Of a stretch of DNA of 64,000 bases, positions 471 through 49,501 are shown piece after piece. How positions within the stretch are numbered: position 1 is the first letter of the stretch; every line of letters begins with the position of its first letter. A model generated the notes under the pieces. The model did no database searches. It worked only from the letters and a program-made list of their open reading frames with translations, and was not told where the DNA came from. The position numbers were made by a program, and so were the translations under genes. The stretch is from Mytilus californianus (lineage: Eukaryota), in NCBI RefSeq assembly GCF_021869535.1, contig NW_026262745.1, positions 77,252,001 to 77,316,000 of the forward strand. Direction: 5' to 3'.

Positions 471-595
471 CTGAGTTCCCGTCTGTTTCCATGTTATAAT
501 TCCTCCCCTTAAAAATGACTGGAATGAACTTTTTGTACCAGAAAACATATTGCAAGAAAGATATGTGTTGCATTTTTAGTTAGTATTTTATTCAT
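471..595 (-). pseudogene. Exon 1 of a tandem paralog ([41 protein letters not shown]) with a +2-nt frameshift; the gene continues off the left edge
   Basis: Clear homology to 49379-49501; donor CAG|GTAACC; 125 nt versus 123 nt; the extra TA creates an in-frame TAA. Could be an assembly error beside homopolymers. Confidence 0.75.
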
Positions 596-11739: not shown

Positions 11740-12250
11740 CTAATAAAACTTTGCATGGCCTAAGTCATTGCAACCATATAGTGTCGCAGTTCCCAATTGT
11801 CGAATCCAGTAGTCCTCTTTTTGTCTACGAAGAGGCGTTGCAAGTTGAGGATTGTTAGTCTTGTGGTATATTTTTTCGATAATACGAACTGTCATAGAAA
11901 CGATGGAATGATCAGGCTGATTAAAATGCTGGTACAGAATGTCGTTTGCATTGAGGTTGATATCTGATCTATGGCCGCACATACGTTTGTTTAGCCTTCC
12001 TTTCGTTTCACCGACGTAAACCAATCCGCAAAGGTTACACTCTAATCCGTAGACGACATTTATAGATTTACAATTCAGATCATCGTAACTTCTAGTAAAA
12101 CAAGACTTTTTAGTTAAATTGCTAGTGAATTGAGCATCTGTTAATAAAATTTCACAAGTTTTGCAGCCATTTGTTCCACATTTTGAAATGAGACAGTGTT
12201 GTTCAGAGTCATCAAAATCCAAAATGTCTTTAAGGAGAACTGAACATGGC
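11740..12250 (-). mobile_element. GIY-YIG endonuclease fragment of a Penelope-like element
   Basis: CKTC..NCKSINVVYGLECNLCGLVYVGETKGRLNKRMCGHR..HF..H..RRQKEDYWIRQLGT. Confidence 0.88.
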
Positions 12251-17747: not shown

Positions 17748-17902
17748 TCACATATAAAGAGGATTGTATGTATCAATAGAGCTACCTGGGCCTTTGATAA
17801 ATGAAACTGAACTTTTTATCAGTACTCCTGTCAATATTCCAGATAAAACCAAGCCGACTGATACGAAAACAACACTCAGTACATAGCCTGTGTTGTCAGC
17901 TT
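17748..17902 (-). CDS. Terminal exon: TM helix + cytoplasmic tail ([51 protein letters not shown])
   Basis: ttttag| phase-1 acceptor; ~23-aa hydrophobic stretch with GILTG (GxxxG); NPLY motif; TGA at 17750-17748. Confidence 0.82.
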
Positions 17903-20900
17903 CTAAAATGCAAAAAAAAAAATAACACAAAAAGATATACATAAATAAAGTAATGGTTAACATATTTAACATTGTCAAATCATGTGTGTGTCTGTCCCTA
18001 ATTAGGAGCCTGTATTCAAGTGGCTGTCGTTGGATGCTGTTTGCAATATTTGTTGTTAGTTTACTCTCGTTAGCGTAAATCAGGCCATTGGTTTCCGTTG
18101 TTGAACCGTTTAACATTTTTTTTTATAGTCCTGTAACCGAATACTTATATAGTAATATACATTAGGGACATATTGTTTTCTCTCAGGAACTACGAACTAG
18201 AGTTTCTTCCAATTTTGCAGCAAGCTTCTTGTATTATTGTAACATATAAGTTCATTTTAAACAACCGTTTGATATTTGCATTTAACTGTCTAAATTCAAA
18301 AAGCATTGAACTATTTCTTTTTGGTTACTTGCTAGCAATAATTAAAATTTCAACATTATAATTTGTTGAGAGTAATATTTATGATATTGTAAGCACTTCA
18401 GCTCCTTATTTTTTTTTTATATTAACATTATTTAGACACATAACGGTGAAAACCAATACAGTGTGTTTCTGTTAACAAATATAATGTTTTCGTGTCGTCC
18501 ACAATTTCATACTGCATAAACAGTTTTGTGTTTTGCAGGTGATGCATGCATCAGGTCTTGATCATTATAGAGTTCATGTAATTCCCTCAGTTTGTGTTTG
18601 CTTATCTTGATTTCCATCTTAAATCAATTAAAGGGACATACTTTTGCCTTATTTTATTTTTACCTGTCTCACAATGATCACCAGTATGTGTTAAAGGACA
18701 TGTACATGTGTAATCAAAGAGACCATCTACACAAGTACCTCCATTACGACATGGTAGATCCTCAAATTTGCAGAAATCAATATCTGGAATGTAACACAAA
18801 CTTGTTTGAATATATACTATCACCTGATACAACATATATACTGCAAAGTACAAGTAACGTTATCGTAATTATAAATATGTTTAGGATTTCACAATTACTT
18901 TTCTAAGATGTGCTAAATGGGAATTTTCGAGGGAACCAACTGCTCTTTTCGTTGAGTAGAACCGCTTTACTATAACATTTCATGACATGTATTTGCTTCA
19001 TGAGTTCTTTGACACAGCTTAGCTGCTTTTAAGATACCCTTTAAAACAAATATTTGTAATGAGAAAAAGGCATTATACACTGTTAAGTAATATATTGCCT
19101 ACGTCAACACATATCGGTACCTATCACCAGCTCCTGTTGTTGAGCAACTCCACGGGTTCAGTTGAAAAAAGGAACCTTTCGGATAATCTAATAACCTTCA
19201 ATTGTTAGTGGTTACATTTCGCACACTCCGGTTATTATCCTTTTTAATCCCCATGGTGACTGAGCGATATACATTTGTCACTTGGTCTTCTACCGACCAG
19301 CAGTTATACTCTTTATCAAACTGGGGTATCCGTTTTATTGTGTTTGGTGTATAAATACGCAACCATGTACTGTCAGATTTGAGACGTTAAATCAGATGCT
19401 TTGTGTAGAGAGAGTGCCATTCTCTCTGCACTTTAGAACCCTAGCAACAAATCCTTGATGGGTTCTTATGGGCCTATTGCAAGGCTTGATTTCTATCCCT
19501 ATCCTAATTTTCAAGTGGCAGTCCAAATTTCCATCCTTTATCCCGGTCGCCTCTTATAACAGGACCTATCTATTGTATAGATTGATCATTTGTTCTCGTC
19601 CTGAACATGCAAGACATATTTAACACTGGGCATAAATCAATAAACAATCAATCAATATTGCTGTTTTATTTAATGTTTTCATCAGTCTTTTTTAGCTTTT
19701 CTTGGATTTCATGTCATCTCTTTTCGGATGTCACAATTATATTTCAATTTCAATCTGAATTTAGAATGATAAGTTTTCTCTGTAAACAGAAAATAGTCTT
19801 TTTAATGGTTAAAACATTGCTTTATGAAAATTGTCCAAAAAAATATACAAAACAATACGTAATGATAATCCATTGCTCTATAGACAGACAATAATCGGTC
19901 AAACCAAATATATACACGAAAATACAGCAATCTGAATATTTGCATCATGGAATTTTCAAAGTCGTCATACATTGAATGATTCTCTAAGAAATGTTATCTC
20001 GGTAAGTTCTTTTTTCGTGAATTTCTGTATTTTATATATATGGTTCCTTTTAAAGCTGATTAAATTTAAAAAAAAAAACCAATTGTTTGAAGAGATGTTT
20101 CTTTAATGTTGGTCATACAGTGTGAGCAATTTTCCAATACTTAATCTGAATCAAGAATGATATGTTCGTCGTAACTAAAAGGAGAGCCCTACTTTCTGAG
20201 ACATGTGCCTTATATCCTTACAATACAAATGATACCTTCTTGGAGACACATAAATCGGATGATTGTACTACCAAAAATGTTTTTAGTCGATGCAGAGGAA
20301 AACAAATATAATGAAAAAATATATCTAAGTATTTTTCCTGTAAACGAGCTCATTGACGCCCCCCCACCTTTTTCAACATAAAACCCAATGACAATTTAAA
20401 ATCTCTATAAGCAAGTCGATTAAGATAAAAAAAATAAAGTTTTAACTGATTTGTTGTTTCATGATAAATTAATGAAACAAATAGGATGATGATTGCAATT
20501 GAGTACTAACAGATTAAATAAATGCTAGTGAAGAAACACATGCGATATTCACACAATAAATCAATATATAAAGATATAACAAAACTCGTTCATATTATTA
20601 ATTGTTGAATTGAAAGACTCATAGATTAGACGAAAGTAATACTTCGTTCTTACTATATAATTTTTCTTTAACAATTTAAAACCAAATGTTTACAAAATGG
20701 AAAGGTTCACCTCAGTTATTTGTTATGATATAATTTTTTTTAATCTTCTCAATGTTGTTTTGCCTGTTCATAAGACTGTTTAAATCTGATAAAACAAGTA
20801 TATGCTTTGAACATGTTGAAAAATAAAGATAAGGGATCAAAGTTTACGAGTTAAATTCTTACAAACTGCTAGAGTGTTGGTCTTCAACTTGACCAGTTGA

Positions 20901-23900
20901 AAGTTGAATAAAAAGTCACATGATTTACCAAAATGTTAAGACCCGTCAGACACGTCGTTTAAACGGGGCATTTATGAGGTTTTTTTTTTGAAAACCTTTA
21001 CATGTACTTATGAGATTGAATAAACTAACTTATCAATGATGACACAAACAATGTTCCTAGAGATGATAACAGTCATTGCAAAACAAACAAACTGATTTAA
21101 TCAACACATAACCTGTATAGGAAACTATAATATTGATTGATGATTGTTGGATGCTAAACGTCCAGTGGCAAATATTTCATGCATGTTCAGGACGAGAACA
21201 AATTAACAATAAACACAATAGGTAGATATGGTAATAGAGGTCAACATGGTTGTAGGTCGGGGAAATTTGGACTGCCACGGGAAAATGAGGGTATTTTAGA
21301 TAGGGATAGAATTGTAGCAAGGGTTTTTAACGTGCAGAGAGCGTGACACTCTCTACACGAGGCATCGGATTTAACGTCCCCATTCTGACAGGACGTGGCT
21401 GCGTATTTGATATATCCCACACAGCCAAACGGACGCTCCACTTTTGCAAGGGTTTTACTGCCGGTCGGAAGAAGACCTGTAATGACCATATTTCTATTTC
21501 CCAGTCACCCTTGGGGAGGAAGCTGAAATGGATATATAAATTGAAACAAATGGAATGCATTATTTATTTTGAAATATAATATATAAATAAGAAGATGTGG
21601 TATGAGTGCCAATGAAACAACTCTCCATCAAAGTCACAATGTGTAAAAAGTAAACAATTATAGGTTAAAGTAACCCTGCTTTAAATAGGCATTGGTGAGG
21701 GTATGCACAATCTTCAAAAAAAAAAAAAAATCATTAACGGGTTTTTTTAATAAGCATTAAAAAAAATGAAATACTCATTGCAGATACCAATAATCTCAAT
21801 GATATGTTGCTTCTTTATAATTTGTAGTGTAATATCATAATTTGAAATGTTTTGCAGAAATGAAATATTGCGGATTCGTTTTTGGCCTTTGCTCTTTTGA
21901 CAAAAAATGGTGGCACATATTTATTTTATGTGTTCACAACACCTGTATATTGAATGAACTTCATTAGATATGCTATTACAAAATGGGTGGAAATTAATTC
22001 GAATAATGTAATACAAACCAAAAAGGTAGTGTAAGATCTACCTTGCTTGATAGAGATGCAACCTTTTTAGTATTAGCAAACGTACACTTCTAAACCTTTC
22101 AACTAAAACGTAATGATTCACACTTTAAAGCAAATCTTTACACTATCCAAGTTAGTTTACCTGATTCGCAGTGAAAGCCAGTGTGGGAAACTGGACAGGT
22201 GCAAGTGTAGTTTAACACACCATCAACACATGATCCGTTGTTTTCACATATAACACCATCACAGAAATCGATATCTATAAGGAAATTTACCATAGTAATA
22301 ATAAATAATGAGAAAGGCACACATGCGTTATATGCATATGGTTATGCATAAAAAATAAAAGTTCAAGATAAGGAACAGTCAGTGATATAAGAGTGTCTGG
22401 CTTGACTTTATAGAATAGATATTAATAGGCGAAAAAAACTAAAGAATAGAGAAAAATGGACCAAAAAAATAAGATAAATTAAGAGAACAAAAGTGTGGTT
22501 TAATACTGTAAATTCAGAAATTATTGCAAGATTTTTATTGATGCAAATAGTGCCACTGGGTAAGTATCAAAATAAAAACTCGCATTCTGATATCTGATAC
22601 ATATATTTGTACTCAGCTTTTCATGAAATGTTCATTCTTCCAAAATCGCAATAATACATGCCCGCAATAAGTTCAGAATTTACAAACTAGAGAATATTGA
22701 ACAAAACAATAAAGATCAGAGATAAATTGCATAACAAATTTAGGAAGACAGAAATGAAAGCCCAACATCGAGACCATCATGCAAAGGAATACTTTAGATA
22801 TAATTCATGTTGAAGTCACAATATAATTGAATAAAACTTAGCAGAATTTAAAATACAAAATACTGTATAATATAACTATGTGCTAAGAAGAATGGTTCTA
22901 TGTTAGCTATGATGACATCTATTGCATTCTTATCATGTTCGCCCGGCAATAGAGAGAACGAGGCAATGTTCTGCAGCCACCAACTAATTGGGCCTACTAT
23001 TGCAAATCAACATTTATCAGTTGAATTTCCCGAAAAATATATAAAAGGAATTTCCCTTTAATCACATTTTAACTTCTTTCAAGGAAGTATTTTTTAAGGA
23101 AAGTTTTTCAATATTCTATACTAGTCATTTATCAACACGACGGGTGCCATATGTAGAGCAGGATATGCTTACCCTTCTGGAGCACCTGAGATAAACCCCA
23201 GTTTTTGGTTGGTTTCGTGTTGCTCAGTCTTTGGTTTTCTATATTGTTCTGTGTACTGTTGTTCGTCTGTTTGTCTTTTTCTTTTTTTAAGCTAAGGTGT
23301 TGTCAGTTTGTTTTCAACTTGTAAGTTTGAATGTCCCTTTGGTATCATTGGCCTCTCTTTTATCGCACCTCGGATAAATTACTGACGTTATAATTGGTTT
23401 AACGCCGTCACGTGGTGACCCACTATGGATCCGTATGGGTCAGTCAGTGGTTTTCGTATTGAGTTCCTTACGTCACGTCTATCATAAATGGTGACGATAT
23501 CTTTAAATGTTCGTGTATTTCATTGGTTATTTTAAACAAAACTTGGCAGGAAAAATCCCATGTGTGGTTAAATCATTATACGGTTCACCATCGACTTGCA
23601 TCTAGAAATTGACAATGATGGTCGGTTGAAAACAAAACATTACGACAAAAGAGTTGATTTCAGCTTTTCAATTGTGAACTTTTGATTTCTATGCATCACA
23701 ATTCCAGCAGCCCTTGCATACGGGGTATATATCTCCCAGTTGATACGATATTCCTCATCATTATTTCACTGATATAGAGTTGCTACTCACAAGGAAGCTA
23801 TTACACCAAGAGTTCCAAGTGGTGAAGTTGAAATCGTCCCTTTGTAAATTTTACGGACGCCATCACGAGTTGGTTGACCGTTATGGAGTATCCGTTTCTT

Positions 23901-26900
23901 AGATGAAAACGGATATGTTCCAATTGTCGTAGCTACAATCCCATCACCTTGTTCCCGAATGTGACCTACCGAATTAGACTTATCATCGGGTATGTACATA
24001 CTTGGAGAAATTCACCCAGTAAAATTTAAATCTTTATTTATACTCGGCACAGGCTAAATTATTTTTACGATTAACCTTAGTTTACTTTCAATTGTAACAC
24101 ACAATGTCTGGTTTGACTTCTAGACGTTTGACAGTACAGTCATATATCAACACTGGTACAGGCATTATATCACAACAAATGGTATTTTAAATTACAGATA
24201 GTTAATATATTATGGTCCTTTGTCTCAATTTTTCTTTTCGTTTATTGATGTCATGGTTTATAGGTATCAGACTGCAGTGTCTTTTTTAACATTTGCATAA
24301 CCATTACCATCAACAATAAGTAGGCGACTGTTCTAGTGGAAATTCGAATTTTTTTTTAAAACTTTACATGCTAAACTTTTATTGTGAAATGCAAATACCT
24401 ATGAAGACAATTGCAAATCGACCTTTAACAAACAACACTTACCCATTTACATAATGATGATTCTGTTCATGTATTCAGAAAACAATATTGTTGATAGTAT
24501 CAAATAAAAGAACATAATATTCAGTTAATAAATAAACATAAATTACCTGTTTCACAGTGGTCCCCTGTATGCGAAAAAGGACACTTGCAAGTGTACACAA
24601 ACAATCCATCGACACATACTCCTTTATTGTGACATATCACACCTTCACAAAAATCTATATCTAAACAAAAAATAACACAATTTGCATATGTATGCACCAG
24701 ATGCATAAAGTGTAGTTATATTTTTATATATACTTATAAAATACAGTTTAATCAGGGCCCTGGAGGCGTCTCGAATGTATAACCAATTTCATATAAATAG
24801 GCTTATCCTAGATGCTAGGATTATAATTTTCTACGCGAGACGCGCGTTTGATCTACAGTAAAGCTCGAGTCCAAAAATTTAAAACAGCCAAATAAAGTAC
24901 GAAGTTGGAGAGCATCGTGAGCATTGAGAACGCAAAATTCCGAAAGGTTTTACAAAATCTAACTAAGGTAATCTATTCCTTGGGTAGAAAATCCTTAGTA
25001 TTTCGAAAAAATCAATGTTTTGTTTACAGTTAATTTATAATTGTGACCATCGTAATGATAATTCATGTCAAAATATAAGTGCTGGCTACTGGGCTGGTGA
25101 TACCCTCGGGGTACATTTTTATAGGTAACTTTGTATTTCATATTCTTAATTTGGCAAATAACCAGTTGTGTGAAACACGACATAACGATGGGTATTTTTT
25201 TAAGAAACAGAAATGTCCTACCCTTCTGGACTACGAATCAAAATTCATACATCGTAGATAACATGGATAAACCGACCAAACCATGTTACATATAATTTTA
25301 CCCATTCCAAATATTCATTTGCAATGAGAATATACTTTCAGCTTTAACAAGATGAAAATATAGGAAAAAGTTTGAGAGAATGATAGCCGTGCCTTTGGTA
25401 TTGTAAATTGGTAATACTTTTTTTTCTTTGGCGACCAAGGGAACGCCTATAACATGTATAATTTGAATTGGGATATTTGTAATCAGGAAATCCATTCAAG
25501 TTGATTAATTGGTGATTAAGTGTTGACCATCAAACAGTTGAATGACATTGATTTAGCGACATAATATTCTTAATAAAGGGACAACAATAACACAAACACG
25601 ACAGGCCTATACAACTTTCAAATGCAATCATATCGTTGAAGTTTCCATTTTTAGCATAAAGATCGTTTAGTAGTATTTGTTTTGAACAAGAAATGGATAG
25701 AGGTAACCAAGGCATGAACTAGATTTTATTAAGTCATACACAAATTACGAACTATGTTTGGTCAAATATTTACCTATTTCGCAATGGTCTCCAGTATGCG
25801 AGCTCGGACAGGTACATATGTAATCAAGCACACCGTCTACGCATGTGCCTTCGTTTTGACATGTAACTCCTAGACAAAAATCTACCTCTACAACAATGGA
25901 AATCAATCATTATATATTGAGTAAAATATCAAACAGTAAGGTATCGGTAACATACTTTGCCATTTCCCATTAATTTTATTATTGGCCGGAATTGGTGCGC
26001 AAGTATTGTAATTTCTGAACAAAATTTTATTTTAGGATTTAAATAGTTTAAATTGGTTCATACATGGTAATATTAGTAACGCTTGCAAGTATATACGTAT
26101 TTGGTATTCACAATAATATAAATAATTACATGCTACAGTGTTACTGTGAAATGCAAAAGAAAATGATTTTCTGTAAACGGATAGAAAACCTAATTCAAAT
26201 ATGCATTTATAAATCAATGATAATTAACATACATACAGACCACAAATATGTTGGTATGATCGCGTAGAATGCTATAATTTTTATTACATCAACATATCAC
26301 TCGTTTACTTGTTTCGCAATGAACCCAGGTATGCGAAAATTGACAATTACAAGTGTACCGAAATAGTCCATCAATACATGCTCACTCGTTTTGACATTTG
26401 ATATCTTTACAAAAATCAATATCTAAAATGAAAAAAAATGCACTTAATTACATTTTTAATGATTTATCACCGTACTGACAAAATTCGAATACATATCTAC
26501 AAAATGCATCATCCCTTACAAAGGCAATAAGACTCGTGTCTTGCTTTGTGATGTTATCATTTATTTGAAATAGAGAAAGGCAAAGGGTTTAACGTCAATT
26601 TCAGCACTTTTGGCTATATCAGTCAATTTTCAGGCTTATTATATTCGATAACTTCAGAACTGTACAGTATTTATTTAGACAATTCAGCATAATGTTGATT
26701 ACAGGAACATAACAACACCTGTTTGAACATAGACTGAACAGATCTTAATTGACTGCAAGCAAATTGTTCAAATAAATCATTTTTTTGTGATATTAGATCA
26801 AAATGACTGTTTAAGATTAAATGCATTTCCTAGTGGGAGTACATGTATAAACTAATGATGAAGACTACACGTAGCAACTGTAATAGTTATAATAAATTAG

Positions 26901-41900: not shown

Positions 41901-44900
41901 GTATGAGATCGTTATGACTGTGATGACTTATCTGAATAAATATTGTTTAAACTAAATGTGTGAATGGTGTATTTCATTCTATATAGATATATTAGCAAAA
42001 GATTTCCAACAACAAATTGAAAACTGAATAGAGTATCTCTTACAAAGAGAATGAATACAGTGTTAAAAAGATCGATATTTTAATAAAGATATACTAATTT
42101 ATATATTTTCTACACACAGCAGTTCATTTGATGTTTCATCAATTTTGTCATGTTTCTTGCGAATTATAAAACGTCTCACTGATTATATTGGAATTGCGTG
42201 ACAGTAGATTTATGCATAATATTTTTTTGGTCAGTTACAAGGTAAAATGAACTACTTGTACTTGGAATGATATTAGTAATCAGTCTTCATATTTACCTCA
42301 CATTGGTCGATCCACTATTAGCCACAATAGTCTGAAAAAATGTTGTGTTTAGTGCTATGGTAGCTACCGAACCATTTACATTTGTAAGATTCAGTACTAG
42401 GGGTTTATCGTCGCAAGAATCAGTTGTTGAAGATATATCGACCAAAAACTGTAGCGGCACACTACTTAAAGGTGTAGCAGTGTCGGAAACAGAATAATCT
42501 TCTATCTGTAGCGCAACAGCGTGCCAACCAGTACTCCTCGATGCAGTGTAGGATAATATACATGAAGCCTGAAAATGAATATTACATTTGCATTTAGTAA
42601 AATCCCGAATGGTCAAAAAATGTGCTGAGTTGTAATATTGTTATGAAATCGTAACATAAGGTAAAATATGTCTCTAATTCATTAATTATTATCGCAATGA
42701 CAAATAATCGCGATTAGGAGCTAGGAAGTAAGGATATATAAAGTTAATGGCATATTTGCTTCACTCGCGGAACACGTCTACCAGGTCTATGTATTACTAA
42801 TAGTGATTAATACCATTTAACAAGGGATTTTTTCTGCTGTTTGTTTTCTTCCTTAATATCATAGATTTATTATGAGCAGTAATTTAGAAAGACGATAAAA
42901 CAAGACTTTACGGAATGGGTCTTGCTCATTGTTGAAGACCTGGCGGTCACCAATATTGACGTGCATCCATATCATTCCAACTGTTATGGATATTATTGGC
43001 ATTGCCAATTACACCACATCTCCTCTTTTTTTATATATCAAAACAAGCTTACATGTATTGATAATCTTCATATAGGTATGGAATATTGTGCACAAGTTTA
43101 TAAATAGATTTCGTCAGTATATTCCTAAAATATGCACAACAAATTACATTTATAACTTGCCTCGTTTAAAACTGCTCCTGGAAATGCTTCACAGACATTA
43201 GAACATTCATCACTTTGTGAATTTTTAGCCCAACGACATTTAACAGTGTCTCCGTCGTCGTCCTCCACTAAAAGAAAACAATTATTGAAAATTTAAATAA
43301 TGTGAGATAGATGTTTTAACAAACATATCGTTTTGCCATCGAATTCAGAATTCTCAGACGACGGAAAATGCCCGGTATGCATTTTTTTTATGATGGTAAT
43401 GATGATAAAAAGCAATATATTCGTTAAACAATTCAATTATTGAAGTTACTGAATATCCGTGCTTTTCGTGATAAACAGATCCAAGTAGAACACTAAAAGA
43501 ATTGGTATATAAAGCTTTAAATTGTGCATTTAAATACATATATTACATAATGAGAAATTTATGTACAAAATATTCGCTGAATTTGACTACTTAACATCAA
43601 AGCAGGGTTTTTTGTATGTTGAGTACTTACAATGTTTATCAAACTGGTGAATAAGAAACACATTCAAGATTTTCAAGAAAGTATTTCACCAAATATGTAT
43701 GGTTGTTTTTCTGTGGACTTCATTTTAGAAGCTATTTAGTTATTATATTTGTCAAAAAAAAAAAAAAACTGCAAAAATAGATCGGCAAATACAAATCAAT
43801 GTTTTATTAATACATGCAATTTACACCGAAATATGCCCAAAATATATTAAAAAGTAAAATAACAAAAATACCGAACTCAAAGGAAAATACAAATCGGAAA
43901 GTCCCTTATCAAATGTCAAAATCAAAAGCTCAAACACATCAAACGAATGGTAAACAACTGTCATATTCCTGACTTGGTACAGTCATTTCCCTATGTAGAA
44001 AATGGTGGATTAAACCTGGTTTTATAGCTAGCTAAACCTCTCACTTGGTAACAGTCGCATAAGATTCCATTATATTGACAACAATGTGTGAACAAAACAA
44101 ACAGACATAATAGGTAAAAATGTCAAAAATAGTTTATAGATTAAGTTTTGCAAATACAACTTGGCGTCAATATGTCCTGCAAATTGAAGAATAAGGACAT
44201 ATTTTGGTCGTTCCATATATATATTAGGTGACGACTTTTATCTTAGATATACAAAAGGATATTTAAATTACCTGGTATTCTTAGCGAATAAGAACATCCA
44301 TACTTAAAACGAACAATAGGTTGCATGGCAGAAATAGGTGATGTATTTATTTTGCCAGTATCTTGCCTGACAGAGAGATTTGCTGTGGCAAGCAATATCC
44401 AACTACTGCTACTTCCAACCACAAGAGTACTTATCCAACAGCAGCTACCATACCTGGAAACATTTATCATGTTTATAAACATGGTTAGATAAATGTGTGA
44501 ACAAATACAATTTTATTTTGCACTGTAAATGGGTGAAGCCGAAAAATTAACAATAAAAAATAACCACATAATGTCTTATGCTTATATTTGAATGCCTGTT
44601 AATTATTTTGCAAGTATTCTGTGTTAAATCGTCATTTTAGATAAACATGTCAATAACAATGTGAACTGGTGTCCATTTCTTAGCACCCGAGTGTATACCC
44701 TTTTTTAGTTTCTAATGTTATTTAGTGTTTTGTGGAAAGTCATTTGTCTTTTCGTCTGTTGGCAATTTTGATGTTTGGTTTTCTTCGACTTATGTCTTTT
44801 TATTGCCTCCTTGGTATATTTGCACCGTTTGTACAACATTTTAACATCATGTTTATAATTACGACTGACACTTCTACTGTATAGAGCTCTGATCATATCT

Positions 44901-47900
44901 AAAATAAAAATTAGTATAATTTTCAAAGGATTATTCTTTTTGAAATCTTTTATTATTCATCGGACCAGGTAATGGTCAATTCCACATCTGCCCTGTACAA
45001 TTACAATGTATCTGTTTAATGAGGTCAAAAATGAACAGTTCCGTTCAATTTGACTTCGTCCTATACTTTTAAACTGGTCGAAATATTTAATGCAGATTTA
45101 ATATTCAGATACACTTCTTAACACTGCTACGTGATAATGCGCCTAACCTTAGTCAAATATATCGGCAGTTTTTTTTTTTTACTTGTTATTTTTATCCTTC
45201 CATTGTTTTCATTTTGAAAGATTGTCGGATATATCAAAACTTTGCGCTTGAGAAATTGTATTGAATGTTATCCATGAGTGAAGATCTCTTTTTATGTTGA
45301 TTTTAGCTTATGTACCGGACTTATCCTTACACATGTTGCACATTGATATCAAAAGACCATCCCATACAAATTGTTTCATTAAAGAATTATGTTAGAACCT
45401 CTTCCATTATTGTCTGTAATGCATTTAAAAACTTTTAATTAAATGAATAGATAAAACAAAGTGCATGTACTCGCAATTGTAAAGTAACGAACGAGCTATT
45501 TGTAATTAAAGTAATGATATTTTACAAAAGACCTGGATTTTATCAACGTGTCTTTTGTTTCTTTATTCAAATTACATTGTTGAAAATAATGAAACTAATG
45601 CATATGATTTTTAACAATTAAAAGTTTTAGGTTAAACAATGAAGTCATACTTCACCAAAAGTGAACTAGATACATAAAGACCTTGACCTGATATAAGTAC
45701 GATTACACTGGTGTATTATAACGAAATACAGATATGAACAATGAAATAAGTTTTGGTAATAAAAATAGATATGAAACAAGAGTTGTTTTTCACAATGTAT
45801 AAGTGATATTTTGTAAAATTTTTTTAATGTATCCTTCAATACTAAAATGTATAATGTTCAGACTTTAATGAAAAGAGTAAGTACCTAATTTGTGGTTTAA
45901 ATAAGTCTTTTACGTGGTCGAAGTGATATATTTCTAAATTAACCATTGTGTACACTATCCACGTTATCACGACAAATTCCTAATGTCTGTCTCTTTACCT
46001 TTATGTGTCATTTCATTGTATTCGATTTTGTTGGTAATAAAGAATTTAGTAATAAGAAAGTAAATAAATTAAAAAAAGAAGAATTGACAATGTACTTTTA
46101 TTCATTCAACAAATTTACCCGAACTGAAAAATATTGTCAGACGTTGGAATAAAAGTATATGCTATGCTCCGTTGACCAGCTGACCAGTTCTCATCTAAAC
46201 TATAATCAGTGCAGTAGTATGCCATAGGGTTAACAATAGATCCGCTACAACCATGATAGCATGCCAAAACACCTTCTCCATTCATTATATTCCCATTAAT
46301 AATGTTGCTGTCATAACACATGTGATTGCTGGAATAATCTCTACGAAATGCTAATCGGTATGATATTTCTATTTCCTGGATTGAAAAAAAATATATCAGT
46401 TTATTTATAATTTTTATAATAATTTATTGCATTCCATATAATTTACAGTTTTTATATATCTTTAATGTTTTTTTTTTACTTTTTTTTGCTTATCTTTACG
46501 ATATCATTTTTAAACCGGTAAAGGCAGATTTTGGTCATAAATGTGTATTTTTGCACAGAACGATTTAACTAAAATATAGAGGTTTTTTCCGTAAACTAAT
46601 TCGGCAATATTTGTCTCATCTGTCATCAGACTTTTTTTAAAATGCAAGATTTACCCTTAACTTCACTTATATAAAGTGAAATAAGGTTTCGTATCTGACA
46701 ATTTTTTCGACAGTCTATGGCATGGTATTGGTTGCAAAAATTTGATATTTTTCATTTAAATACAATATTTGTTTAGTTAAATGGTATATTTTTTCATATA
46801 AATGGAATATTTGTTATTCAAATGGTATAATTTGTCATTCAAATGCAATGTTTGTATTCAATTGGTATAACTTGTCATTTTAATGCAATATTTTTATATT
46901 CAATTGGTATATTTGTTTTTAATTTATATGCAATAAATGCATTATGGGAAATTGTTGACGTAACAAGGTCAAATTTGCAACAACGTTTGTGATTGGTCGG
47001 TAATTGTTTGCATTTTTTCCCTTTCTTTCTAAACATGAGTGACCAAGAATTGAAAAACGCGTCAGAATATCGCCCCTCTAACTAAATCTGGCGTTCGTGC
47101 GAGTCCTGCCCTGGCTGTTAATGCTGTTAATACATAGCAACCCCCCCCCTTAGTCCAGATACATGTAATCATGACGTTCTCTGAGGCTATATCATATTTT
47201 ACTTATCTTATTCTTCAGAGACTTTGCAGGAATGCAAACATAATACAGAATAAAAAGCCTTCCAAGACGTTATATTTATTTGGACTAAGCCCCCTCTTTT
47301 TTGCTAGAAAAAAATCACTAATTACGACAGCAGAACCAGAGACCCACAAGAGGTGCAAAGAGTGCCGGTGTAACCCTCTTTGTGTTCAAAATATACATGA
47401 AATATTTGCCACTGCATCTTGTCTATGAATTATAACCCTGAGTTTTCTATCTGTTACATGCCAAGAAATCTTCGCTCAAAACTCCTGTGGACCTCCGACG
47501 GCACCCATTAGTAGTTAAAGATTTGATTTCGTTCAACAAATTAATTCATGACCTGCATGTACGTATCGCTTTGCGCACGGCCATATACCAAATGGTCAAT
47601 ATTATCATCCGTGTAATTTATTCTACGGGATGTTTGCATAGTTTCAACGGAGGCAATTTCTTGGCATGCTTTTAAATGATTTACTTGTCAATACTGCAGT
47701 TAGGGGGGGGGGGGGACAGTTCTGATGATTTATTTTTAATTGTGTAATGTTTTATTTTTTGTTTATTTTGTGACACAGTATATAAAAAAACAAAATGTAT
47801 ATAATAAGATACAAACAAGTTTAAATTGAAAACAACGTTCAAACCTATGATTGCGTTGGATAAAAACCGCAATTTTTATACGTGCCCATGCAAAACAAAT

Positions 47901-49501
47901 TTCTTGTTAGAGGGGTCTAAATACAGCACAAACAACATTTTCCAAAAGACCAAAAAAGTGAAAAAGTACATTTTAACAAAACGCATTCGTCTAACAGGTC
48001 GAACATCAAATGTTCTTAAACCCTGCCATTTGCGATTGCCAAATAAACGGATCACAAGGTGTAACTAATGGGTCTTATTTATGAATTTAATACCAAACAG
48101 AAAAATAATAAACTTGCGGCAAAGATGGTATACCGCAAACAAAGGTGCAAAGATTTTTGTACACCATATCCGGATTTCGACAATTAATGTCTCTTCAGTG
48201 ACGTATGGAATCGAAACGGTATATAATATAATAAGATAAACAACTCTAATGATTTGCATCCAACAAATTATAGGATTGTACGTTTAGCTATTATCTAGAC
48301 CAGTACAAAATGTATATTATAAGATACATATATACATCCATTGGGTTTTTTGATATGCAAGCCGTGGTCTCCATACCCGGTTATGCAGACCGGCTATATT
48401 TACAGGCCGACCGGCATCAAAATTTCAAAGCCAGTCGGCAAAATTGTTAATTTTATGGTGCGTTATCGGGACAATCAACTAAATTTAGAAGAGAAGGACG
48501 AAAGATACCAGAGGGACAGTCAAACTCATTGATCGAAAACAAACTGACAACGCCATGGCCAAAAATAAAAAGACAAACAGACAAATAATAGTACAGATGA
48601 CACAACATAGAAAACTAAAGACTAAGCAACACGAACCCCACCAAAAACTGGGGGTGATCTCAGGTGCTCCGGAATGACCCTAAAATTGAAAGTCGCGATT
48701 GGTGAAAGAAAAAAAAAAAAGCAAACGAATCATTGTGCTTTTCATTAATTTATGCATTACATTATATGGTTTTTATTGTTCTTAAATTCTTCCATAATTA
48801 CCTACAATATAAATTAAGAGTTTACTTTAGACAACAGAGAGAAAAATAAAAACAAAATATAACCGACTTCTTCATTTGTTGTTGTTCTAGGTGCTCTAGT
48901 TCATAACAATATTTAATCCTTTGGGAAGGGACATTGAACATGTGCATCATGAAGTAAACAACAATACTTGATATTGCAGTTAATATATTTTCTATCACTT
49001 CGATGTATATCAGCATTATATCAAATCAAATCAATTTTATTGTCATTAAACATTTACAGCATGCTTTGTGACAATACTAGTTCAAACATACAATAAACAA
49101 AACAACAACAAAAAACAAAAAAAACAAAAAAAAATTATTAAAAATACGTAAGTGATAGATTTACAATGTTACAATATTCAATAGCCATGTTATAATGAAA
49201 TCTATGCCCTCGGATTTAATGGCTTTTTTTTTAAAAAGAAGCCAACAATTCTTACATGTCTAAAGGAAGTGGGTTTTAATATATAAAATAACTGTGTTCA
49301 TCAGGGAAATGAATGAAATGTTTAGCATCTATTTGTATATCATTAAACAGATTTTAAATGTATATGAAATTAATTTACCTGAGGTCCCGACTGTTTCCAT
49401 GTTATAATTCCTCCTCTGAAATGACTAGAATGAATTTGTTGAACCAGAAAACATAATGAAAGCAAAAAATTAAAAAAACTGTTAGTTAACAATTTCTTCA
49501 T
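17748..49501 (-). CDS. Whole gene: type I membrane protein with integrin-beta-like/Sib-like N-terminal domain, 19 EGF repeats, TM helix and NPxY tail (27 coding exons, ~1156 aa)
   Basis: Manual spliced assembly. All acceptors are AG, all donors GT except one GC, and phases match at every junction. Summed exon length is 3471 nt = 1157 codons including TGA. Confidence 0.88.
18664..18783 (-). CDS. Last EGF exon ([40 protein letters not shown])
   Basis: 120 nt, phase 1-1, AG/GT. Confidence 0.87.
19120..19655 (+). mobile_element. SINE, same family, older and more 5'-complete copy
   Basis: GACGTTAAATCAGATGC..GTAGAGAGAGTGCC core; CAAT tail. Confidence 0.7.
21131..21520 (-). mobile_element. SINE, same family
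   Basis: Reverse-complement match to 16249-16674. Confidence 0.8.
22161..22274 (-). CDS. EGF exon ([38 protein letters not shown])
   Basis: 114 nt, phase 1-1, AG/GT. Confidence 0.87.
22504..22686. mobile_element. MITE (TIR TACTGTAAATTCAGAAATTATTGC)
   Basis: Imperfect inverted termini. Confidence 0.6.
23130..24000 (+). mobile_element. Penelope-like RT 3' fragments
   Basis: [15 protein letters not shown] and [12 protein letters not shown] similarity (23590-24000); family 3' end at 23130-23360. Confidence 0.75.
24547..24660 (-). CDS. EGF exon ([38 protein letters not shown])
   Basis: 114 nt, phase 1-1, AG/GT. Confidence 0.87.
24802..25111 (-). mobile_element. Retrozyme-like monomer with inactivated hammerhead
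   Basis: Shares AAACGCGCGTC..GCGTA and the TTCGTACTTTATTTGGC flank with 40340-40480; CUGAUGA lost and GAAA changed to CAAA. Confidence 0.65.
25774..25887 (-). CDS. EGF exon ([38 protein letters not shown])
   Basis: 114 nt, phase 1-1, ttgtag| and G|GTAAAT; not in the ORF track. Confidence 0.85.
26309..26422 (-). pseudogene. EGF pseudo-exon with premature TGA ([37 protein letters not shown])
   Basis: 114 nt with intact AG/GT; in-frame TGA at a Gly position. Confidence 0.8.
26925..27038 (-). CDS. EGF exon, type A (..[12 protein letters not shown])
   Basis: 114 nt, phase 1-1, open frame. Confidence 0.85.
27464..27576 (-). pseudogene. Degenerate type-B EGF exon
   Basis: 113 nt from the nearest AG (frameshifting); Cys2 changed to Phe; acceptor tract diverged next to a SINE insertion. 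Confidence 0.75.
27628..28054 (+). mobile_element. SINE, same family, 8-bp TSD, inside one tandem unit
   Basis: TSD TTGTATGC at 27620-27627 and 28055-28062; (CAAT)n tail. Confidence 0.85.
28434..28547 (-). CDS. EGF exon, type A
   Basis: 114 nt, phase 1-1, open frame. Confidence 0.85.
28982..29095 (-). CDS. EGF exon, type B
   Basis: 114 nt, phase 1-1, open frame. Confidence 0.85.
29490..29765 (-). repeat. Second interspersed repeat family inserted in one tandem unit (also 36120-36375, 21585-21670, 63040-63390)
   Basis: Shared AAGA(A/G)GATGTGGTATGA.TGCCAA block; absent from sibling units. Confidence 0.7.
29878..29991 (-). CDS. EGF exon, type A
   Basis: 114 nt, phase 1-1, donor G|GTTGAT. Confidence 0.83.
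30426..30539 (-). CDS. EGF exon, type B
   Basis: 114 nt, phase 1-1, open frame. Confidence 0.85.
31007..31120 (-). CDS. EGF exon, type A
   Basis: 114 nt, phase 1-1, open frame. Confidence 0.85.
31555..31668 (-). CDS. EGF exon, type B
   Basis: 114 nt, phase 1-1, open frame. Confidence 0.85.
32135..32248 (-). CDS. EGF exon, type A
   Basis: 114 nt, phase 1-1, open frame. Confidence 0.85.
32682..32795 (-). CDS. EGF exon, type B
   Basis: 114 nt, phase 1-1, open frame. Confidence 0.85.
33264..33377 (-). CDS. EGF exon, type A
   Basis: 114 nt, phase 1-1, open frame. Confidence 0.85.
33814..33927 (-). CDS. EGF exon, type B (..[10 protein letters not shown]..)
   Basis: 114 nt, phase 1-1, donor G|GTATTT. 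Confidence 0.83.
34398..34511 (-). CDS. EGF exon, type A
   Basis: 114 nt, phase 1-1, open frame, six Cys. Confidence 0.85.
34936..35049 (-). CDS. EGF exon, type B ([38 protein letters not shown])
   Basis: 114 nt, phase 1-1, AG/GT. Confidence 0.85.
35518..35631 (-). CDS. EGF exon, type A ([38 protein letters not shown])
   Basis: 114 nt, phase 1-1, ttatag| and G|GTTAAT. Confidence 0.85.
36381..36646. repeat. TTGC/GCAA-rich self-complementary repeat ending in TGTAAGGG; probable MITE fragment
   Basis: Many TTGCTGCAA-like palindromes; CCC/GGG-type terminus on one side only. Confidence 0.4.
36873..36957 (-). pseudogene. Heavily decayed EGF exon relic
   Basis: Residual ..[15 protein letters not shown]|GT similarity; flank at 36731-36770 matches the tandem-unit intron sequence. 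Confidence 0.5.
37540..38540 (+). mobile_element. Penelope-like element C-terminal ORF fragment plus 3' region
   Basis: [33 protein letters not shown]...SLHRK* (stop at 37906-37908). Confidence 0.7.
38659..38772 (-). CDS. EGF exon 1 ([38 protein letters not shown])
   Basis: 114 nt, phase 1-1, six Cys, AG/GT. Confidence 0.9.
39483..39523 (-). CDS. Exon 7 ([13 protein letters not shown]), 41-nt linker
   Basis: tcttttccag| acceptor, G|GTAAGT donor, phase 2-1 bridging exon 6 to the first EGF exon. Confidence 0.82.
40402..40443 (+). ncRNA. Type I hammerhead ribozyme of a retrozyme-like repeat (intron 6, antisense)
   Basis: CGUCA-CUGAUGA-GUC(UUUUGUA)GAC-GAAA-C(GCUG)G-UC^UGGCG; the helix III palindrome (ACGCGCGU in sibling copies) is mutated. 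Confidence 0.75.
40494..40655 (-). CDS. Exon 6 ([54 protein letters not shown]), beta-sandwich-like
   Basis: ttcttttag| acceptor, GG|GTGAGT donor, 162 nt, phase 2-2. Confidence 0.87.
42297..42568 (-). CDS. Exon 5 ([44 protein letters not shown]...NSGSTNV)
   Basis: ttttcag| acceptor, AG|GTAAAT donor, 272 nt, phase 0-2. Confidence 0.88.
43161..43267 (-). CDS. Exon 4 ([36 protein letters not shown]), GC donor
   Basis: ttcttttag| acceptor, GAG|GCAAGT donor, 107 nt, phase 1-0; D-x-D-G-D-x-x-x-C-R-W-A motif typical of the family. Confidence 0.85.
43855..44130 (+). repeat. Interspersed non-autonomous repeat family (also 17190-17435, 6860-6960, and 56270-56590 reverse)
   Basis: Shared GTCATATTCCTGACTTGGTACAG..GTAGAAAATGGTGGATT.AACCTGGTTTT block. 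Confidence 0.75.
44272..44453 (-). CDS. Exon 3 ([60 protein letters not shown])
   Basis: tttccag| acceptor, G|GTAATT donor, 182 nt, phase 2-1. Confidence 0.88.
46119..46375 (-). CDS. Exon 2 ([22 protein letters not shown]...[34 protein letters not shown])
   Basis: ttcaatccag| acceptor, GG|GTAAAT donor, 257 nt, phase 0-2, open frame. Confidence 0.88.
46745..46920. repeat. Minisatellite, ~21-22-bp unit (TATTTGTCATTCAAATGG..)
   Basis: About 8 degenerate copies. Confidence 0.7.
48160..48205 (-). ncRNA. Type I hammerhead ribozyme, intact core, palindromic helix III (intron 1, sense strand)
   Basis: UACGUCA-CUGAAGA-GACA(UUAAU)UGUC-GAAA-U(CCGG)A-UA^UGGUGUA; all conserved core nucleotides present and stems I, II and III pair. 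Confidence 0.82.
49379..49501 (-). CDS. Exon 1: signal peptide + SHFRGG motif ([41 protein letters not shown])
   Basis: ATG at 49501, hydrophobic core, donor CAG|GTAAAT (phase 0); homologous to the exon at 471-595. Confidence 0.88.

What the first reader, a model, noticed from the sequence alone, without database searches (positions are those of the whole stretch)
17748..49501. Integrin-beta-like (Sib-like) receptor on a 19-EGF stalk
Seen: a complete 27-exon model joins an SHFRGG..W / D-x-DGD..CRWA / AVALQIED / [10 protein letters not shown]-terminal domain to a long EGF stalk, a TM helix and an NPxY tail. Established: similar N-termini occur in Dictyostelium Sib adhesion/phagocytosis proteins, which also have a GxxxG TM and NPxY tails, and in invertebrate proteins annotated 'integrin beta-like'. 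Inference: an uncharacterised molluscan adhesion or phagocytic receptor that holds a Sib-type head far from the membrane and signals through talin/PTB partners. No vWA/MIDAS domain is recognisable here.
Basis: partly seen in the sequence, partly recalled or inferred. Interest (0 to 1): 0.8.

Follow-up and report, generated by a model that had tools for sequence, protein, structure and literature searches.

The report
Mussel receptor with Sib-type head
This is a real, expressed mussel gene for a single-pass surface protein that carries a three-domain head, distantly related to the tip of the amoeba adhesion protein Sib, on a long and fast-evolving stalk of 19 EGF repeats; its family is already in the databases, but nobody has studied what it does.

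Summary
A 27-exon minus-strand gene (49501..17748) gives an uninterrupted 1156-residue protein: signal peptide, ~358-residue head, 19 one-exon EGF repeats, a Gly-rich membrane helix and a 22-residue tail ending DTYNPLYM. All introns are GT-AG except intron 4, which is GC-AG. One transcript contig joins exons 6, 7 and 8 at the predicted boundaries.

The head is a conserved module of three beta-sandwich domains (AlphaFold pLDDT 91.5 on an 81%-identical relative). Its relatives hit the three Sib-specific Pfam families in colinear order. One Mytilus paralogue passes the SIBA-E_N cut-off, so the Sib-like head claim is supported as remote homology.

There is no VWA domain and nothing integrin-like apart from the tail motif. 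The name 'integrin beta-like' given to its relatives is misleading.

The same head sits on adhesion GPCRs, ZP, SRCR, lectin and chitin-binding modules in bivalves, echinoderms, cnidarians, rotifers, amphioxus and a fish. This genome holds at least 24 copies.

The NPxY motif is absent from the sister M. edulis-complex genes, so talin/PTB signalling is unproven.

The scan also noted a paralogue elsewhere in this genome (s1-318138).

Verdict: a new member of a family that is catalogued in databases but uncharacterised. Interest is moderate.

The parts
49379..49501 (-). Exon 1: start codon, signal peptide (MKKLL...QQIHS) and the mature N-terminus [16 protein letters not shown]
   Evidence: homologues start the same way
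46119..46375 (-). Exon 2: core of head domain 1 (the SIBA-E_N-type beta sandwich)
   Evidence: Pfam SIBA-E_N hits on relatives cover this part
44272..44453 (-). Exon 3: end of domain 1 and the linker (CCWI..., [18 protein letters not shown])
43161..43267 (-). Exon 4: start of domain 2 with [14 protein letters not shown]; ends at a GC donor (GAG|gcaagt)
   Evidence: homologues keep FPGAxLNExxC; the junction was not seen directly in reads
42297..42568 (-). Exon 5: rest of domain 2 ([18 protein letters not shown]) and start of domain 3
   Evidence: an X1 contig of 181 nt lies inside it
40494..40655 (-). Exon 6: domain 3 (Ig-like)
   Evidence: a transcript contig piece ends exactly at both boundaries
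39483..39523 (-). Exon 7: 41-nt micro-exon ([13 protein letters not shown]), last strand of domain 3
   Evidence: present in P0001, P0181 and P0183; fits the 43-nt gap in the X1 contig
38659..38772 (-). Exon 8: EGF 1 (unique; has the O-glucose consensus CTSSPC)
   Evidence: (Pfam EGF, E 1.6e-7)
28982..35631 (-). Exons 9-20: twelve EGF exons in six tandem two-exon units of 1.12-1.13 kb (the sixth is 1444 bp), alternating 'T' and 'M' types. High ends at 35631, 35049, 34511, 33927, 33377, 32795, 32248, 31668, 31120, 30539, 29991 and 29095; each exon is 114 nt
   Evidence: units 90-99.6% identical, introns included
28434..28547 (-). Exon 21: EGF 14 (T type)
27464..27576 (-). Dead M-type EGF exon: 113 nt, a Cys replaced by Phe, out of phase; skipped in the model
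26925..27038 (-). Exon 22: EGF 15 (T type)
26309..26422 (-). Dead EGF exon with an in-frame TGA; skipped in the model
25774..25887 (-). Exon 23: EGF 16
24547..24660 (-). Exon 24: EGF 17
22161..22274 (-). Exon 25: EGF 18
18664..18783 (-). Exon 26: EGF 19 (120 nt, membrane-proximal)
17748..17902 (-). Exon 27: membrane helix (GxxxG), the 22-residue tail [22 protein letters not shown] and the stop codon

Best explanation
The gene encodes a type I cell-surface protein of a Mytilus mussel.

Shown or predicted from sequence:
- After signal-peptide cleavage the mature chain begins with SHFRGG. It folds into a rigid head of three beta-sandwich domains. D1 is of the SIBA-E_N type. D2 is Ig/He_PIG-like and carries an invariant DxDxD...CRW and QIED cluster. 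D3 is I-set/cadherin-like.
- The head is held away from the membrane by 19 tandem six-cysteine EGF repeats. The spacing between repeats is Notch-like. The O-fucose consensus is present in 17 of 19 repeats and the Asx-hydroxylation consensus in all 19. The classic calcium-binding start is absent.
- A Gly-rich membrane helix and a 22-residue tail ending DTYNPLYM follow.

Inferred:
- The head is the ligand-binding end of an adhesion or recognition receptor. The same head is recombined in animals with adhesion-GPCR, ZP, SRCR, C-type lectin and chitin-binding modules. It is remotely homologous to the distal end of the Dictyostelium adhesion receptor Sib, and to at least one protein labelled bacterial that has an adhesin-like domain make-up.
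- The stalk sets the reach. It changes quickly through duplication and decay of a two-exon unit.
- The short tail couples to a cytoplasmic adaptor. This would be through NPLY (a PTB or talin-F3 type site) and/or through the more conserved C-terminal [LF]-Y-M.
For: - Gene model and motifs.
- Expression and splicing: one spliced contig bridges exons 6, 7 and 8, and low strand-specific depth falls on exon bins.
- The head aligns as one unit: 37-53% identity over ~355 residues to many proteins.
- Head structure: AlphaFold2 on the 81%-identical P0181 head gives pLDDT 91.5 and pTM 0.91, all beta, three domains.
- Whole-head matches in the ESM Atlas: TM 0.90-0.91 in echinoderm ZP proteins and rotifer proteins, and TM 0.60-0.64 in Bacteroidota type IX secretion cargo.
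- D3 resembles the SraP cadherin-like modules and I-set Ig domains, Z 9.6.
- Sib link: SIBA-E_N is hit by 8 of 26 heads. P0179 scores 30.2 bits (above the cut-off) and P0181 27.6 bits. The second and third Sib Ig families also hit, colinearly.
- Bridging sequence: the Pseudomonadales MAG protein P0225 (SIBA-E_N + He_PIG x3 + Cadherin_3) aligns to the head profile at 98% probability, E 4.5e-14, over 256 columns. With the window's own head as master sequence the values are 97.9% and E 3e-13.
- Domain shuffling.
- Family size: at least 24 copies of exon 5 in this genome, in tandem clusters.
- Stalk dynamics: repeat units are 90-99.6% identical including introns. EGF counts are 19 here, 14 in the M. 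coruscus model, and 5 and 3 in the sister M. galloprovincialis and M. edulis genes.
Against: - No ligand, tissue, cell type or partner is known.
- RNA evidence is thin: one contig and depths of 0.4-3.6. It does not show that all 19 EGF exons are used together, and the GC-AG junction was not seen.
- The Sib link rests on Pfam models at or just below their cut-off and on a bridging sequence from a 3.8-kb MAG contig. No true Sib sequence was compared.
- Structures were predicted for an 81%-identical relative, because the spliced protein has no reference to hand to the tools.
- NPxY is missing from the closest sister genes (HDHLYM) and from the neighbouring paralogue (HNHFYM).
Confidence: 0.7

Rival explanations
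1. It is a talin-coupled, integrin-independent adhesion or phagocytic receptor that works like SibA. The head binds the substrate or particle, and the NPLY tail recruits talin or a PTB adaptor to link to actin or trigger uptake.
For: - The head is homologous to the Sib N-terminus.
- It is a type I protein with a Gly-rich membrane helix and an NPLY motif preceded by DT, as in integrin beta tails.
- In SibA the membrane-proximal NPxY is needed for talin A binding (PMC9197732), and SibA-talin carries force (PMC12686525).
- NPxY recurs in the tails of some distant head-bearing proteins: the 4072-aa Nematostella cluster member P0176 (INPTY) and P0006 (NPLY).
- The overall layout resembles CED-1/Draper/MEGF10 engulfment receptors (my knowledge).
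Against: - There is only one NPxY, two residues from the C-terminus, in a 22-residue tail.
- The sister genes in the M. edulis complex and the neighbouring paralogue lack it, while keeping DT...[LF]YM.
- There is no VWA domain.
- No binding test was run.
Confidence: 0.2
2. It is one member of a lineage-expanded pattern-recognition or self/non-self recognition family. The variable head and the variable-length stalk are diversified for binding microbes or gametes rather than for substrate adhesion.
For: - There are at least 24 copies in tandem clusters in this genome.
- Heads are fused to SRCR, C-type lectin, chitin-binding and ZP modules in relatives.
- Stalk length turns over quickly between orthologues.
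- Large expanded receptor families in bivalves are often immune-related (my knowledge).
Against: - There are no expression data by tissue or challenge.
- The head is well conserved (37-53% identity across phyla), not hypervariable.
Confidence: 0.25
3. The 19-EGF form is partly an artefact. Either the near-identical units were over-collapsed or over-expanded in assembly, or most EGF exons are alternatively skipped, so the real protein has a much shorter stalk.
For: - Units 4 and 5 are 99.6% identical.
- All EGF exons are phase 1-1, so any subset can be skipped in frame.
- Sister genes have only 3-5 EGFs.
- No read evidence covers the array.
Against: - The other units differ by 5-10%, so they are distinct copies.
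- The M. coruscus model from an independent assembly also has 14 EGFs with the same T/M alternation.
- Splice sites are intact on all 19 exons, while the two dead exons have lost theirs or carry a stop.
Confidence: 0.15

Closest known systems
Dictyostelium Sib proteins (SibA-E, 'similar to integrin beta')
   Same: Both are type I membrane proteins with a Gly-rich membrane helix and NPxY in the tail. Both have the N-terminal three-domain region covered by Pfam SIBA-E_N, Ig_SIBA-E_2nd and Ig_SIBA-E_3rd, which relatives of this head hit in colinear order.
   Different: The mussel protein has no VWA domain and one NPxY rather than two. It has a stalk of 19 canonical six-Cys EGF repeats and is 1156 aa long, against ~1900 aa for Sib (my recollection). 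Sequence similarity is only at profile level, and talin binding was not tested.
Invertebrate proteins named 'integrin beta-like protein A/C/D' or 'uncharacterized' in RefSeq (e.g. P0031 from M. californianus, P0209 from M. edulis, P0017 from Antedon, P0181 from M. galloprovincialis)
   Same: They carry the same ~355-residue head at 44-81% identity. P0181 and P0182 also share the EGF, membrane-helix and tail layout and are the sister genes.
   Different: The C-terminal parts differ (chitin-binding domain, mucin-like stalk, 3-8 EGFs). This gene has the longest EGF stalk seen here. It keeps NPLY, which P0181 and P0182 lack.
Adhesion GPCRs of bivalves with the same head (P0003, P0064, P0156, P0177)
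   Same: The same head sits at the N-terminus at 44-51% identity, presumably as the extracellular binding end.
   Different: Their head is followed by HRM, GAIN/GPS and seven membrane helices rather than an EGF stalk and a single helix.
CED-1 / Draper / MEGF10-type engulfment receptors
   Same: Analogy of layout only: an N-terminal binding domain, many EGF repeats, a single membrane helix and an NPxY tail (my knowledge).
   Different: They have a different head (EMI/NIM), a different EGF type and much longer tails with an extra YxxL. No homology beyond the EGF repeats was found (no such Pfam hits).
Integrin beta subunits
   Same: Only the DT-x-NPLY tail motif resembles the talin site of beta tails.
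   Different: There is no PSI, hybrid, beta-I (VWA-like, MIDAS), I-EGF or beta-tail domain. No integrin Pfam family is hit by any relative.
Protein labelled bacterial, with He_PIG/cadherin-like repeats (Pseudomonadales MAG protein P0225); Bacteroidota type IX secretion cargo proteins
   Same: P0225 starts with SHFRGGSLSW and aligns to D1-D2 at 98% hhalign probability. The Bacteroidota cargo proteins match the whole head at TM 0.60-0.64.
   Different: P0225 lacks the conserved cysteines and continues with He_PIG and Cadherin_3 repeats. It lies on a 3.8-kb MAG contig, so its origin is not secure. The Bacteroidota match is by shape only.

Membership tests
Sib family (Dictyostelium SibA-E) | N-terminal SIBA-E_N domain followed by the second and third Sib Ig-like domains | tested here: met
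   Tested on relatives, because the spliced protein cannot be handed to the tool. P0179 (51% identical) scores 30.2 bits, above the 28.1 cut-off. P0181 (81% identical) scores 27.6 bits, E 3e-6. SIBA-E_N is hit by 8 of 26 heads. The second and third Ig families hit colinearly at E 4e-4 to 5e-3. This is a borderline, profile-level match.
Sib family (Dictyostelium SibA-E) | Extracellular von Willebrand A domain | tested here: not met
   All 1156 residues are assigned to signal peptide, head, 19 EGFs, membrane helix and tail. No VWA hit appears in the orthologue or paralogues.
Sib family (Dictyostelium SibA-E) | Type I topology with a glycine-rich membrane helix | tested here: met
   There is a signal peptide and a single hydrophobic stretch at residues 1110-1141 containing [10 protein letters not shown].
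Sib family (Dictyostelium SibA-E) | Two NPxY motifs in the tail, the membrane-proximal one binding talin (PMC9197732) | tested here: inconclusive
   There is one NPLY, at the extreme C-terminus. It is absent from the sister genes. Talin binding cannot be tested with these tools.
Integrin beta subunit | PSI, hybrid and beta-I (MIDAS) domains, four I-EGF repeats and a beta-tail domain | tested here: not met
   No integrin family appears in the Pfam scans of the exons or of the close relatives. The EGFs are canonical six-Cys hEGF/EGF.
Metazoan 'SHFRGG' three-domain head family (unnamed; RefSeq 'integrin beta-like protein C' and others) | ~355-residue head directly after the signal peptide, with SHFRGG..W, CTDYS..EDW, DxDGDxV[RK]CRWA, AVAxQIED[FY], [11 protein letters not shown] and VNVTWTP motifs and 13 invariant positions, 7 of them cysteines | tested here: met
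   Local BLAST of the spliced head gives 97% identity to M. coruscus P0183, 81% to P0181 and 37-53% to more than 60 proteins over the full length. All the motifs are present.
Calcium-binding EGF arrays (Notch/fibrillin type) | [DN]-x-[DN]-[EQ]-C start plus the Asx-hydroxylation consensus | tested here: not met
   The Asx-hydroxylation consensus is in 19 of 19 repeats and the inter-repeat spacing is Notch-like. The E/Q position is Phe (DINFC), so 0 of 19 repeats have the full calcium-binding start.
CED-1/Draper/MEGF10 engulfment receptors | EMI domain at the N-terminus; NPxY plus YxxL in a long tail | tested here: not met
   There is no EMI hit and the tail is 22 residues with no YxxL. This is an analogy of layout only.

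The most novel reading that the evidence does not exclude
The Sib-type three-domain head is an ancient adhesion module, older than animals and shared with amoebae and some bacteria. Animals kept it patchily (bivalves, echinoderms, cnidarians, rotifers, amphioxus, some fishes) and shuffled it onto EGF stalks, adhesion GPCRs and ZP modules. In this mussel gene it still works as in SibA: an integrin-independent, talin-coupled adhesion or engulfment receptor whose reach is tuned by gain and loss of EGF exon pairs.
Probability: 0.12. Interest if true: 0.75.

Novelty: new member of a known kind. Interest (0 to 1): 0.45.

Why it matters
Sib proteins are the stand-in for integrins in amoebae, and talin coupling to them is now seen as the ancestral form of cell-substrate adhesion (PMC12686525). 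This work shows that the distal head of Sib has clear relatives in many animal phyla, where it is recombined with adhesion GPCRs, ZP, SRCR, lectin and EGF modules. That gives a concrete animal entry point to ask what this head binds. It also corrects a misleading database name: the proteins are not integrin-like. For mussel biology it defines a tandemly expanded receptor family of at least 24 loci, and a gene whose extracellular reach differs several-fold between close species. The finding itself is ordinary in one respect: the family is already catalogued, and nothing about function is shown.

Tried and rejected
- Exon-by-exon Pfam scans of the head gave nothing. The signal appears only with full-length relatives.
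- Searching this genome with the PF24907 model exon by exon gave only weak hits, best E 0.36.
- Three word searches never returned a Dictyostelium Sib sequence, so no direct alignment or profile-profile comparison with Sib was possible.
- Foldseek against the PDB matched only generic multi-Ig and cadherin chains at TM ~0.2. A profile search of PDB sequences found nothing. D1 alone has no specific solved relative; the best is Z 6.4, an MG/fn3-like sandwich.
- A motif scan of one genome per bacterial and archaeal species found no relative. A second scan with P0225 found the full D1-D2 only on its own 3.8-kb MAG contig, and D2-only matches in a few MAGs. The flank of that contig did not settle its origin.
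- The ENA metagenome relative P0194 lies in sparse, eukaryote-like context and is not bacterial.
- Tandem Repeats Finder missed the 1.13-kb units because its longest period is 500. They were measured by script instead.
- Literature searches for 'integrin beta-like protein' returned only human ITGBL1 papers. The original Sib paper is not held.
- I did not run complex prediction. The tail is under 30 residues, and talin would have to be spliced by hand.
- The spliced protein was never typed into a tool. Relatives with ids were used as proxies.

Full report
**Observation**

The window is AT-rich animal DNA, at G000:C165:77252001-77316000 of a 1.65-Gb genome. On the minus strand I located stop-free coding pieces, read their splice sites and assembled them.
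- The result is 27 exons and a 3471-nt reading frame without stops, giving 1156 residues.
- All introns are GT-AG except intron 4, whose donor is GAG|gcaagt, the consensus GC donor.
- Homologues keep the four residues that only this donor retains (FPGAxLNExxC). The M. coruscus annotation, which used an upstream GT, lacks them.
- A 41-nt micro-exon (39483-39523) is needed to keep the frame between exons 6 and 8. Its peptide [13 protein letters not shown] is present in P0001, P0181 and P0183.
- Nineteen EGF exons are intact: 18 of 114 nt and one of 120 nt, all phase 1-1.
- Two further EGF-like exons are dead. One (27464-27576) is 113 nt with a Cys-to-Phe change. The other (26309-26422) has an in-frame TGA.

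**RNA evidence**

I had one read-laying run, on 38650-44460, with one contig run and three RNA-seq runs of the likely same species.
- In X1 a 417-nt contig on the minus strand aligns to 40494-40655 and to 38659-38770. These are my exon 6 and exon 8 boundaries. The 43 unaligned letters between them fit the 41-nt exon 7 plus 2 nt.
- A second contig lies within exon 5.
- In the stranded run X24, depth of 0.4-3.6 falls in the exon bins, with the first mate on the + strand only. That is what a minus-strand mRNA would give.
- The high-depth bins (39.6-41.0 kb and 43.7-44.3 kb) are two-stranded intronic repeats.
- The gene is therefore transcribed and spliced as modelled across exons 6-8. The GC-AG junction and the EGF array were not observed.

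**What the protein is**

The layout is as follows:
- Residues 1-23: signal peptide.
- Residues 24-381: head.
- Residues 382-1106: 19 EGF repeats.
- Residues ~1110-1141: the only strongly hydrophobic stretch ([23 protein letters not shown], containing GILTG).
- Last 22 residues: the tail [22 protein letters not shown].

The EGF repeats have these features:
- Notch-like spacing between repeats (C-E-x-D-I-N-F-C).
- The Asx-hydroxylation consensus in 19 of 19.
- The O-fucose consensus C-x4-[ST]-C in 17 of 19.
- An O-glucose consensus in EGF 1.
- None has the full calcium-binding start, because Phe replaces Glu/Gln.

**The head**

No single head exon hits Pfam.
- Searched with HMMER against 1.84 billion proteins, exon 5 found 317 relatives.
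- The spliced head aligns end to end with dozens of them at 37-53% identity. It is therefore one conserved module of about 355 residues.
- It has 13 invariant positions, 7 of them cysteines, and the motifs SHFRGG..W, CTDYS..EDW, DxDGDxV[RK]CRWA, AVAxQIED[FY], [11 protein letters not shown] and VNVTWTP.
- AlphaFold2 on the head of P0181 (81% identical to ours, 59-sequence alignment) gave pLDDT 91.5 and pTM 0.91. The fold is all beta, in three domains: D1 at 1-135, D2 at ~140-255 and D3 at 256-369.
- No solved structure matches the whole head, and PDB sequences hold no relative.
- D3 is an I-set/cadherin-like sandwich. The best match is Z 9.6 to the SraP cadherin-like modules.
- D1 on its own is a generic MG/fn3-like sandwich with an inserted helical, disulphide-rich loop. 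The best match is Z 6.4.
- In the ESM Atlas the whole head recurs at TM 0.90-0.91 in echinoderm ZP proteins and in rotifer proteins. It recurs at TM 0.60-0.64 in Bacteroidota type IX secretion cargo proteins.

**Relation to Sib**

Pfam now holds families built on the Sib N-terminal region.
- Relatives of our head hit SIBA-E_N over nearly the full model. The scores are: P0179 30.2 bits (cut-off 28.1), P0181 27.6 bits (E 3e-6), P0131 26.2, P0180 25.1, and 8 of 26 heads overall.
- Ig_SIBA-E_2nd and Ig_SIBA-E_3rd are also hit, more weakly (best E 4.7e-3 and 3.8e-4).
- The three families fall at head residues ~8-128, ~148-240 and ~258-340. That is in order and on the three predicted domains.
- A profile word search added P0225 from a Pseudomonadales MAG. 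It begins SHFRGGSLSW, hits SIBA-E_N (25.5 bits) and continues with He_PIG and Cadherin_3 repeats.
- hhalign of the head profile against P0225 gives 98.2% probability and E 4.5e-14 over 256 columns covering D1 and D2. With the window's own head as master sequence the values are 97.9% and E 3e-13.
- I could not fetch a true Dictyostelium Sib sequence. The link is therefore remote homology shown through curated Sib models, not a direct comparison.
- Sib proteins are defined in the literature by a VWA domain, a Gly-rich membrane helix and two NPxY motifs, of which the membrane-proximal one binds talin A (PMC9197732, PMC12686525).
- Our protein has no VWA domain, and there is no room for one.
- What it shares with Sib is the distal, non-integrin-like part, plus the topology and one NPxY.
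- The RefSeq name 'integrin beta-like protein A/C/D' carried by its relatives is an annotation transfer from Sib. It says nothing about integrins.

**Family and distribution**

- This genome holds at least 24 exon-5 copies in tandem clusters on C165, C1, C132, C110 and C88.
- Exon 1 of the next paralogue, the counterpart of M. coruscus P0001, lies at window 471-595 on the same strand. P0001 and P0183, the M. coruscus counterparts of the two genes, lie on contigs of identical recorded length (630,169 bp), so probably on one contig.
- The head is joined to many different C-terminal parts:
  - adhesion GPCR cores (HRM, GAIN/GPS, 7tm_2);
  - SRCR plus ZP;
  - EGF plus SRCR;
  - bacterial-type Ig repeats;
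  - a chitin-binding domain;
  - a C-type lectin (amphioxus);
  - ZP (a teleost, Cebidichthys).
- Named sources are bivalves (Mytilus, Crassostrea/Magallana, Saccostrea, Mercenaria, Dreissena, Sinanodonta, Potamilus), crinoids and a sea star, Nematostella, bdelloid rotifers, amphioxus and a fish.
- A scan of one genome per prokaryotic species found no motif-level relative. D1 was found only on the 3.8-kb MAG contig.

**Stalk and tail evolution**

- Exons 9-20 lie in six tandem two-exon units of 1.12-1.13 kb; the sixth is 1444 bp, ~320 bp longer. The units are 90-99.6% identical, introns included. A seventh unit carries the dead M-type exon.
- A tree of heads puts the window gene with M. coruscus P0183 (97% identical). 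This pair is sister to P0181 (M. galloprovincialis) and P0182 (M. edulis). Next out is P0001, then P0180.
- EGF counts are 19, 14, 5, 3, 2 and 8 respectively. Stalk length therefore changes several-fold among close relatives.
- The tails read DTYNPLYM (window, P0183, P0180), DTHDHLYM (P0181, P0182) and DTHNHFYM (P0001).
- The constant parts are VS[FY].KG.G.S.DT and the C-terminal [LF]-Y-M. NPxY is not constant.
- Some distant head-bearing proteins also have NPxY tails (the Nematostella cluster member P0176, and P0006), but most do not.

**Interpretation**

The architecture is that of a cell-surface binding protein: a conserved, rigid, disulphide-bonded head at the end of a long glycosylated EGF rod, with a minimal tail.
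- The reuse of the head on adhesion GPCRs, ZP, lectin and SRCR proteins argues that it is an extracellular binding module. So does its homology to the tip of an adhesion receptor in amoebae and to a protein labelled bacterial that has an adhesin-like domain make-up.
- The ligand is unknown. Whether the receptor serves substrate adhesion, engulfment, immune recognition or gamete recognition is also unknown.
- Coupling through talin or a PTB adaptor is possible for this gene but is not a conserved property of its clade. The conserved C-terminal [LF]YM is an alternative docking site; it fits a class II PDZ-type ligand (my inference).

**Novelty and score**

- The family is already present in RefSeq, UniProt and Pfam, under misleading or empty names. 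I found no paper on it.
- I class it as a new member of a known, uncharacterised kind, with interest 0.45.
- The scan's first stage also flagged a paralogue with the same reading elsewhere in this genome (s1-318138). It also flagged the EGF exon-pair array and the tail of this same gene (s1-274912 and s1-274980).

Noticed in passing
window 471-595 (minus strand): Exon 1 (signal peptide plus SHFRGG) of the next paralogue downstream, 82-87% identical to M. coruscus P0001. The two genes form a head-to-tail tandem pair. Their M. coruscus counterparts lie on contigs of identical recorded length (630,169 bp), so probably on one contig.
   Followed up: partly
window 48160-48205 (intron 1): Another first-stage note calls this an intact hammerhead ribozyme. 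Rfam found nothing in the whole window at gathering score. It found no hammerhead family at E up to 1 in 47800-48600, only a chance-level speF hit.
   Followed up: partly
window 11743-12363 (minus strand): A 207-aa ORF in the intergenic space has a weak GIY-YIG nuclease hit (E 1.1e-3). It may be a remnant of a Penelope-like or other mobile element.
   Followed up: no
window 39620-40980 and 43690-44280: These intronic stretches are covered at very high depth on both strands in all RNA runs, by reads that fit only partly. They look like abundant transcribed repeats or transposons, not exons.
   Followed up: no
window 43161 (intron 4 donor): The donor is a GC-AG intron donor. The M. coruscus annotation of the orthologue used an upstream GT and so drops four conserved residues (VLNE). 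The P0001 model lacks ~17 residues at the same place. Both are likely annotation errors caused by the GC donor.
   Followed up: partly
P0224 (Cebidichthys violaceus) and P0215 (Branchiostoma belcheri): The head also occurs in chordates: fused to ZP-N/ZP-C in a teleost and to a C-type lectin in amphioxus. The family is therefore not confined to invertebrates.
   Followed up: partly
L016 (Chloroflexota MAG), L015 (Thermoplasmatales MAG), L017 (Nitrosarchaeum MAG): Prokaryotic MAG loci match only the D2 part (He_PIG-like) of the bacterial bridging protein P0225, at 26-55% identity over short stretches. D2 therefore belongs to a widespread Ig/cadherin-like class.
   Followed up: no
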